Shown here: positions 16,583-17,890 of the stretch, in pieces
Numbering within the stretch: position 1 is the stretch's first letter
Layout: the number at the start of each line of letters is the position of its first letter
Assembly (NCBI GenBank): GCA_003427395.1
Contig: BFEA01000037.1
Coordinates: 4,707,477 to 4,771,476, forward strand
From: Chara braunii
Lineage: Eukaryota > Plantae > Charophyceae
DNA: 64,000 nt
Direction of reading: 5' to 3'
Position numbers and translations under genes: made by a program
Notes under the pieces: generated by a model
Seen by the model: only the letters and a program-made list of their open reading frames with translations
Database searches by the model: none
What the model was told of the DNA's origin: nothing

Positions 16583-17890
16583 ATAATGGATGAGGCGTGG
16601 AAGGAGGCGGCCAAGCTCCGCTGCCCATTTTCGGATACATTAGGTTCCAAACGAAGAAAAATGTGCGCAAGACAAAGAATGAAAGCAAGGGGAGAGAGTT
16701 CGTTTGAACTGGGTCGGGTGCACTCCCCATCCAAGGGACTATATTGTTTTTTGTGGTCAATCCAAACTTGGATTGAGATATTTAACTGTTTTTTTACTTT
16801 GTGACAGGCAAGATCCGAAGTGTTACTAACTATGTGAAGAACAACAAGATTGTTTATCAGCTCCATGACACACGCTATTGCCCAAACGAGGGACAACACC
16901 ATCTTAAAAATAATGGTGAGTGAGAAAATCAAACTACTATGACCAATGGTGGTAGTGTGTTGTGGAGCTTTTGTCAATTGTTCATATGTTACTGTTGCAT
17001 ACTACAGTAATGGTGAGTAGGAAAATCAAACTACTATGACCAATGATGGTAAAATCATATGTATAATTGTATAATCATTAACTCCATTTTTTTTTTAAAT
17101 TGTTATGCAGTTATGTTCGTCGTTAACGTAAACACAAGGACTTGGCATATCAAATGTCATGATGAGGACTGTAACGACAAATTGGGACGAGGTGAGATTG
17201 TACACAAGAACCCACAACCTTTACAAGTGTTGAATGCATGACACCATCCCTGTGTTGTGGATGTTGTTGCAGCCCCTTCTGCAAATGTTTCCATATCCTA
17301 CCCTATCTGTTATTTGCTTTATCTCACATTTTTATTAGAATAATTCAAAAAATTGACTACAGTAATAATTTTAAAATTCTAAATACTGAAAAATTCTAGT
17401 CTATCACTTCCGTCCGGCCAGACGCCCGGGCTCGGGTGACTGGGATGCCTCCGCCCAATCACCTGAGGCTGGGCCTAGGGGTTGCACGGTTGTGCAGTTC
17501 AGGCCGAGTCTTGTGAGATAGCCCTCAACCAAGTATCAAGTGCAAGTAACAATGAACAATTTCGTCTAGTTCACAGGCGGGACAAGTATTAGAGTTTCGG
17601 ATAGTTGGATTGAGTTAATGATATGTTTATTAGTTATTTCTCTATCAAATCAACATTTTTTTATGTCTTTTGGCTTAATATGCAACTTTCATATCATAGA
17701 AGTTTGAAATTTCAGAAGATTGTTTCAAAACATATTGAAAATAAAGCATCTGCTATACTCCTTAGATGAGGAGGAACAACAAGGGAGGAAGAGAGTGGTT
17801 GCGGGGGATGCCATGTGTACAAGTAGTCGTCAGGGTAAAGTGGCAGGAGGAGGAGACAACGGCGATGGGAGGCGCGCAAGAAAGGCATGA
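16583..17890 (+). CDS. Spliced partial gene encoding a PrimPol/UL52-type C-terminal zinc finger; exons ~16583-16712, 16808-16915, 17111-17191, 17766-17890
   Basis: Joined translation G-KIRSVTNYVKNNKIVYQLHDTRYCPNEGQHHLKNN-VMFVVNVNTRTWHIKCHDEDCNDKLGR has the Cx6Hx19Cx4C spacing of PrimPol. Exons join in phase with AG acceptors; the second and third donors are GTGAG, the first (GTCGGG) is weak. No AEP catalytic domain seen. Confidence 0.8.

What the first reader, a model, noticed from the sequence alone, without database searches (positions are those of the whole stretch)
16583..17890. Intron-split PrimPol-type zinc finger, invisible to the ORF track
Seen: exons 16808-16915 and 17111 onward join in phase (G|GTGAGT ... 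TGCAG|TT) to give KIRSVTNY...IVYQLHDTRYCPNEGQHHLKNNVMFVVNVNTRTWHIKCHDEDC. Established, from recall: the PrimPol/UL52-like C-terminal Zn finger reads GIRRW...VY...RWCENIGRAHKSNNIM..VD....WYQKCHDPVC, with the same Cx6Hx19Cx4C spacing. There is no room here for the AEP catalytic domain, because a tandem array lies directly upstream. Inference: this is either a deletion derivative of a primase-polymerase-encoding mobile element or a stand-alone ssDNA-binding finger. I know of no described eukaryotic transposon class built on PrimPol.
Basis: partly seen in the sequence, partly recalled or inferred. Interest (0 to 1): 0.8.

Follow-up and report, generated by a model that had tools for sequence, protein, structure and literature searches.

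The report
Leftover primase zinc-finger gene fragment
Two small, intact-looking exons in this stonewort (Chara) DNA spell the zinc finger of a PrimPol-type primase, but they look like a silent, slowly decaying fragment inside a low-copy repeat, not a working gene.

Summary
Exons 16808-16915 and 17111-17191 have canonical splice sites and both are phase 1-1. Read in phase, they give four zinc ligands spaced C-x6-H-x19-C-x4-C. That is the spacing of human PrimPol (C419, H426, C446, C451; PMC4027207), not of herpes UL52 (C-x4-H-x29-C-x4-C; PMC8187027).

Tool support for the family is thin:
- Pfam, PDB, the word searches and the big protein search were all blank when run exon by exon.
- Only the Atlas feature search of the exon B piece pointed to PF03121 Herpes_UL52, with scores of 0.81-0.85. 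That is a lead, not proof.

Other evidence:
- No AEP domain or transposase was found nearby.
- Three oligo-dT RNA runs put no read on the exons.
- DNA contigs show about 3-5 copies at roughly 90% identity. Their exon differences look near-neutral (6 non-synonymous, 2 synonymous).
- One copy has lost the exon A donor and another is shifted by one base at the exon end.
- The fragment lies between inverted 70-bp arrays.

My reading is a dead two-exon relic of a PrimPol-family gene carried in a repeat. The scan has already noted PrimPol-type genes beside KDZ transposases on four other pieces of this genome. I could not test a link to them.

The parts
16808..16915 (+). Exon A: first half of the CHC2 zinc finger (Cys and His ligands), phase 1-1, 108 nt
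   Evidence: AG acceptor after a pyrimidine tract, donor G|GTGAGT, open frame 16810-16914. Stops lie upstream in this frame.
16916..17110 (+). Intron of 195 nt containing a 97-nt-spaced duplicate of the exon A end plus donor (16911-16954 and 17008-17051)
   Evidence: 93% identity between the two 44-nt copies.
17111..17191 (+). Exon B: second half of the finger (the two last Cys ligands), phase 1-1, 81 nt. Without splicing the frame runs on to a stop at 17239-17241.
   Evidence: Atlas feature search of 17113-17238 points to PF03121 Herpes_UL52.
16586..16712 (+). Unsupported.
   Evidence: open frame only. No family hit, no relatives, no RNA reads.
15428..16197 (.). Left tandem array, 71-bp unit, about 11 copies
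22048..23761 (.). Right tandem array, 70-bp unit, about 24 copies, inverted relative to the left array (70-80% complementary)
17874..20441 (.). Complex tandem repeat with (GA)n tracts that fills the middle of the bracketed segment
   Evidence: 17874-18000 repeated at 18741-18867, 95% identity.

Best explanation
The two exons are a non-functional leftover of a multi-exon PrimPol-family gene. Only the zinc-finger part survives here, and the catalytic primase-polymerase part is absent. The fragment was copied at the DNA level, because its introns are kept. It sits in a roughly 1.7-kb unique segment that exists a few times in the Chara genome. In this copy it lies in the middle of an 8.4-kb segment bracketed by inverted 70-bp arrays, a foldback-like layout. 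The fragment is not detectably transcribed and its copies drift apart without visible protein-level constraint. Shown: the exon structure, the ligand spacing, several copies, and no coding partner nearby. Inferred: descent from a PrimPol-family gene, loss of function, and transport by a mobile element. The likely parent is the transposon-linked PrimPol family that the scan noted elsewhere in this genome.
For: The spacing equals human PrimPol C419/H426/C446/C451 (PMC4027207) and differs from HSV-1 UL52 (PMC8187027). In the Atlas feature search of exon B, the three top hits score 0.81-0.85 and all ten family-bearing best hits carry PF03121. In one search, the DNA run X1 shows several contigs per position with 0 to 29 differences per about 300 nt. 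Each contig has a depth of 12-21 and the summed depth is up to 50-98, so I estimate about 3-5 copies at 90% identity or more. The same call shows loose ends from still more diverged copies at 16888 and 16894. One copy has G>A at 16916, which removes the exon A donor. One diverged copy lacks a base near the exon end. The listed differences in exons A and B are 6 non-synonymous and 2 synonymous. There were no RNA reads on 16300-17811 in three oligo-dT runs. No Pfam family was found in the ORFs between 4.9 and 15.2 kb or inside the bracketed segment. No gene product covering these exons is on record. The inverted arrays are shown.
Against: All four ligands, both frames and all four splice sites are intact in this copy, which a long-dead fragment need not keep. 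The RNA result is formally no test, because I did not show that the organism's RNA is present in the sampled 6-13% of each run. The synonymous and non-synonymous counts are tiny, and only 40 of 99 differences were listed. Homology to PrimPol has no significant alignment or profile score behind it, and the Atlas scores are below 0.9. No terminal inverted repeat beyond the arrays and no clear target-site duplication was found, so mobility of the bracketed segment is unproven.
Confidence: 0.6

Rival explanations
1. A working small gene for a stand-alone zinc-finger protein (candidate upstream exon plus exons A and B) that binds single-stranded DNA without a catalytic domain.
For: This copy has intact frames, canonical splice sites and all four ligands. 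The Atlas holds a cluster of about 103-aa streptophyte proteins of which 27% carry PF03121, so finger-only predictions recur in this lineage. The isolated human finger domain binds ssDNA (PMC4027207).
Against: There were no RNA reads on the exons. The differences between copies look near-neutral, and one copy has a lost donor. The upstream exon has a weak donor and no relatives. No protein with this exon is on record.
Confidence: 0.12
2. The 3' end of a longer functional PrimPol gene, either the host gene or a transposon-borne one. Its catalytic exons would lie upstream of the 71-bp array, which would then sit in an intron.
For: Exon A starts in phase 1, so it needs an upstream exon. Large repeat-filled introns are plausible in this repeat-rich genome. 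This last point is general knowledge and was not tested.
Against: No family hit was found in any ORF of 80 aa or more between 4.9 and 15.2 kb. The long ORFs at 6.3-9.9 kb look like a retroelement, not a primase. There were no transcripts. The stretch is multi-copy at about 90% identity, unlike a single host gene.
Confidence: 0.08
3. A chance resemblance: an unrelated Cys/His pattern that only looks like the PrimPol finger.
For: There was no Pfam, PDB or phage match for either exon. The exhaustive search with exon A found only a spurious bacterial repeat protein. The Atlas search of exon A was blank.
Against: All of those tests lack power for 26-35 residues. The spacing of all four ligands is exact across a phase-correct splice. 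The one family named beforehand, PF03121, is the only one returned for exon B out of thousands possible. From my own memory of the human sequence, about twenty further residues match without gaps. This was not verified with a tool.
Confidence: 0.08
4. A remnant of an integrated giant-virus (Nucleocytoviricota) primase gene.
For: The two best Atlas clusters for exon B are mostly viral, with Nucleocytoviricota the commonest phylum.
Against: The finger is split by a spliceosomal-type intron with flanking phase-1 exons. No viral gene was seen in the window. The third Atlas cluster is from Streptophyta.
Confidence: 0.05

Closest known systems
C-terminal UL52-like CHC2 zinc finger of eukaryotic PrimPol (CCDC111); Pfam PF03121 Herpes_UL52
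   Same: It has four ligands in the order Cys-His-Cys-Cys, with the same spacing as human PrimPol C419/H426/C446/C451. The Atlas feature search of exon B returns PF03121 families.
   Different: No AEP catalytic domain is attached or nearby. The fragment is multi-copy, apparently untranscribed, and carries no significant profile score when tested exon by exon.
Herpesvirus UL52 primase zinc finger
   Same: Same ligand order and the same final C-x4-C pair. Same Pfam family.
   Different: UL52 is spaced C-x4-H-x29-C-x4-C, whereas this finger is C-x6-H-x19-C-x4-C. The finger here also has spliceosomal introns.
PrimPol-type genes beside KDZ (Kyakuja-Dileera-Zisupton) transposases and DUF3987 helicases, noted by this scan on other pieces of the same genome (s1-556582, s1-535475, s1-568663, s1-539712)
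   Same: Same genome and the same kind of finger. Those copies are also described as broken and repeat-riddled.
   Different: No transposase, helicase or catalytic primase part is present in this window. I could not fetch those sequences, so relatedness was not tested.
Foldback-type elements (long inverted arms built of tandem subrepeats around a variable middle segment, as in Drosophila FB)
   Same: Inverted arrays of a 70-71-bp unit bracket a 5.8-kb middle segment that holds the finger. A similar layout was noted elsewhere in this genome (s1-563708).
   Different: The arms are only 70-80% complementary and unequal in length (0.8 and 1.7 kb). No target-site duplication or other copies of the whole unit were shown.

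Membership tests
UL52/PrimPol-type zinc finger (PF03121) | Four zinc ligands in the order Cys, His, Cys, Cys | tested here: met
   Separate translations of exon A and exon B. Cys and His lie in exon A, and the two Cys lie in exon B.
UL52/PrimPol-type zinc finger (PF03121) | PrimPol spacing C-x6-H-x19-C-x4-C | tested here: met
   Codons were counted across the phase-1 junction and compared with human residues 419, 426, 446 and 451.
UL52/PrimPol-type zinc finger (PF03121) | Profile match at or above Pfam's gathering score | tested here: inconclusive
Exon by exon there was no PF03121 hit even at E up to 10, but 26-35 residues give no power. The Atlas feature search gives PF03121 as a lead.
PrimPol enzyme (AEP primase-polymerase with C-terminal finger) | AEP catalytic domain (motifs I-III) N-terminal to the finger in the same gene | tested here: not met
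   Only 610 nt lie between the array and exon A. No family hit was found in ORFs at 4.9-15.2 kb. This is a weak test, because short exons would escape it.
PrimPol enzyme (AEP primase-polymerase with C-terminal finger) | Expressed single-copy host gene | tested here: not met
   Several copies at about 90% identity are present, and there were no RNA reads on the exons. The RNA result is weak evidence.
Autonomous DNA transposon carrying PrimPol (KDZ-type, as in earlier scan notes) | Transposase gene in the same unit | tested here: not met
   Pfam on all ORFs of 120 aa or more gave only Ty3/gypsy-type domains at 44-49 kb.
Autonomous DNA transposon carrying PrimPol (KDZ-type, as in earlier scan notes) | Sequence relatedness of this finger to the transposon-borne PrimPol copies | not testable with these tools
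   No eukaryotic genome collection is on hand, and the searches from the exons found no relatives.
Foldback-like mobile element | Inverted arms made of tandem subrepeats | tested here: met
Foldback-like mobile element | Target-site duplication and several copies of the whole unit | tested here: inconclusive
   There is only an 11-nt imperfect direct repeat at chance level.

The most novel reading that the evidence does not exclude
The bracketed 8.4-kb segment is a non-autonomous deletion derivative of a DNA transposon that carries its own PrimPol-type primase. That would be the KDZ-linked family seen by the scan elsewhere in Chara. The inverted 70-bp arrays would be its ends, and the break seen in a sister copy at 16417 would mark the deletion that removed the catalytic exons. 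I found no published eukaryotic cut-and-paste transposon with its own primase-polymerase.
Probability: 0.3. Interest if true: 0.6.

Novelty: new member of a known kind. Interest (0 to 1): 0.3.

Why it matters
On its own this locus is a small dead fragment and changes little. Its value is as a marker. It shows that PrimPol-type finger exons are scattered in several diverged copies through the Chara genome together with repeat arrays. That fits the idea, raised on other pieces of this genome, that a PrimPol gene was spread by a large DNA transposon. If longer copies share these arrays as ends, this copy would help define the termini and the non-autonomous forms of that element.

Tried and rejected
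- **Pfam:** scans of each exon and of the candidate upstream exon gave no relevant hit.
- **PDB:** phmmer with each exon gave nothing for exon A and chance Mdm4 hits for exon B.
- **Exhaustive search:** phmmer of exon A against 1.84 billion representatives gave one spurious bacterial repeat protein.
- **Word searches:** the ORFs over exon A, over exon B, and the 133-aa antisense ORF (used as a handle for sister copies) were all blank.
- **Exact look-up:** two ORFs of the locus are not on record in public assemblies.
- **Phage records:** tblastn of each exon found no match.
- **Atlas:** the search of exon A was blank.
- **Within the window:** tblastn and blastn found no second copy of the exons.
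- **Rfam:** a scan of the whole window found nothing.
- **Ends of the segment:** a search for terminal inverted repeats or a target-site duplication outside the arrays gave scores at shuffle level.
- **Earlier findings by sequence:** the look-up was blank.
- **Joined peptide:** it was never built, searched or folded.

Full report
**What is there**

The window is eukaryotic DNA. On the + strand there are two short exons.
- Exon A is 16808-16915. A pyrimidine tract and AG precede it, and G|GTGAGT follows it.
- Exon B is 17111-17191. TGCAG precedes it, and G|GTGAGA follows it.
- Their lengths are 108 and 81 nt, so both are phase 1-1. The split codon (G at 16915 plus TT at 17111-17112) reads valine.

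I counted from the two separate translations. The cysteine at codon 24 and the histidine at codon 31 of exon A, and the two cysteines of exon B, are spaced C-x6-H-x19-C-x4-C. I kept the exons apart throughout. The decisive profile test of the spliced model is therefore missing from this report.

**Is it a PrimPol-type finger?**

The literature gives the human PrimPol zinc ligands as C419, H426, C446 and C451 (PMC4027207). That is exactly the spacing found here. Herpes simplex UL52 has C-x4-H-x29-C-x4-C (PMC8187027). The finger is therefore of the PrimPol spacing type, not the herpes type.

From my own memory of the human sequence, about twenty further residues on both sides of the first cysteine also match without gaps. 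I could not verify this with a tool, and it counts only as a lead.

Exon-by-exon searches had no power and gave nothing:
- Pfam and PDB.
- Phage records.
- The exhaustive search with exon A, which gave one spurious bacterial hit.
- The three word searches.

The one positive tool result is the Atlas feature search of the exon B piece. Its three best clusters score 0.81-0.85. Two of them carry PF03121 Herpes_UL52, and all ten family-bearing best hits share that family. Scores below 0.9 are only leads. However, this was the single family predicted beforehand, so I take the finger as PrimPol/UL52-type with a probability of about 0.8-0.85.

**Is it a gene?**

Nothing links these exons to a catalytic domain.
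- Only about 610 nt separate exon A from the 71-bp array at 15428-16197.
- ORFs of 80 aa or more between 4.9 and 15.2 kb have no family hit.
- The long + strand ORFs at 6.3-9.9 kb look, by eye, like a reverse transcriptase and belong to an abundant retroelement.

No read from three oligo-dT RNA runs of the same species label fell on 16300-17811. About 4.2 billion letters were read, and one read lay at 17812-17874. This is weak evidence, because I could not show on another stretch that the sampled reads cover the organism's transcripts. No protein containing exon A is on record in the large collections.

**Copy number and decay**

Contigs of a DNA run were laid at 90% likeness. They show several sequence versions over the whole 16300-18170 stretch.
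- Single contigs have a depth of 12-21 and summed depths reach 50-98. I read this as about 3-5 copies at 90% identity or more.
- Loose ends at 16888 and 16894 come from still more diverged copies.
- Among the listed differences, exons A and B carry six non-synonymous and two synonymous changes. With 149 non-synonymous and 34 synonymous sites, the ratio is roughly 0.7. These numbers are far too small to separate that from neutrality.
- One copy has G>A at 16916, which destroys the exon A donor.
- One diverged copy lacks a base near the exon end, which changes the phase.
- One contig leaves this copy at 16417, about 390 nt upstream of exon A. This marks a structural difference between copies.

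The differences run equally through exons, intron and flanks. The repeated unit is therefore a DNA segment, not a conserved gene. Because the introns are kept, the copies arose by DNA-level duplication or transposition and not by retroposition.

**Surroundings**

The finger lies in a roughly 1.7-kb unique stretch at the left of a segment bracketed by two arrays. These are a 71-bp array (15428-16197) and a longer array of the same unit in inverted orientation (22048-23761). The arrays are 70-80% complementary, and the unit occurs nowhere else in the window. Between them are also a 2.5-kb complex tandem repeat with (GA)n tracts (17874-20441) and degenerate array-like sequence. This is a foldback-like layout. 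I found no terminal inverted repeat beyond the arrays and no convincing target-site duplication, so mobility of the whole segment is not shown.

**Relation to earlier scan notes**

The scan has noted PrimPol-type genes or fingers on four other pieces of this genome. Follow-up agents read two of these as broken copies of a transposon-linked PrimPol family: KDZ transposase, DUF3987 helicase and PrimPol-type primase, with a compact relative in Klebsormidium. That makes a transposon-borne parent plausible for this fragment. I could not obtain those sequences, so the link is untested. Paper searches found no description of a eukaryotic cut-and-paste transposon with its own primase-polymerase.

**Verdict**

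- The family assignment is probable but rests on spacing, one feature-based lead and recollection.
- The best reading, at about 0.6, is a silent, decaying two-exon relic of a PrimPol-family gene carried in a low-copy repeat.
- A working stand-alone finger gene, a long gene with an array-filled intron, chance, and a giant-virus remnant are each possible at roughly 0.05-0.12.
- On its own the locus is of modest interest. Its worth lies in helping to map the PrimPol-carrying repeat family of Chara.

Noticed in passing
window 6315-9937 (+): Four long ORFs (318, 382, 103 and 232 aa) have no Pfam or PDB hit. The last two show, by eye, reverse-transcriptase-like motifs. They probably form the coding part of the abundant retroelement whose hairpin-bearing leader was noted at 1381-2590.
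   Followed up: partly
window 44239-48916 (-): Ty3/gypsy-type retrotransposon remains: RNase H-like, RVT_1, Tf2-type SH3 and chromodomain hits on separate ORFs, so the frames are broken.
   Followed up: partly
window 16911-16954 and 17008-17051: The last bases of exon A plus its donor site and the first 35 nt or so of the intron are duplicated 97 nt downstream (93% identity). This creates a second potential donor at 17012/17013 and doubles the intron length.
   Followed up: partly
window 16417: A DNA contig of a sister copy matches up to 16417 and then continues for 255 letters of unrelated sequence. This is a structural breakpoint between copies just upstream of the finger.
   Followed up: no
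window 17874-20441: Higher-order tandem repeat of roughly 450 bp. Each unit holds two (GA)n tracts and two related 116-184-bp subrepeats. An N at about 18379 and near-identical neighbouring units suggest uncertain assembly here.
   Followed up: no
Atlas cluster (rank 3): A cluster of 62 short proteins (representative 103 aa), all eukaryotic with Streptophyta the commonest phylum, of which 27% carry PF03121. Finger-only PrimPol-like predictions seem to recur in green plants or algae. They may be further fragments of this kind.
   Followed up: no
window 20700-22040: Longer-period, degenerate versions of the right array's unit (shared core around 20790-20810, 21020-21040 and 21945-21960) lead into the regular 70-bp array, as if the array grew from or decayed into them.
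   Followed up: no
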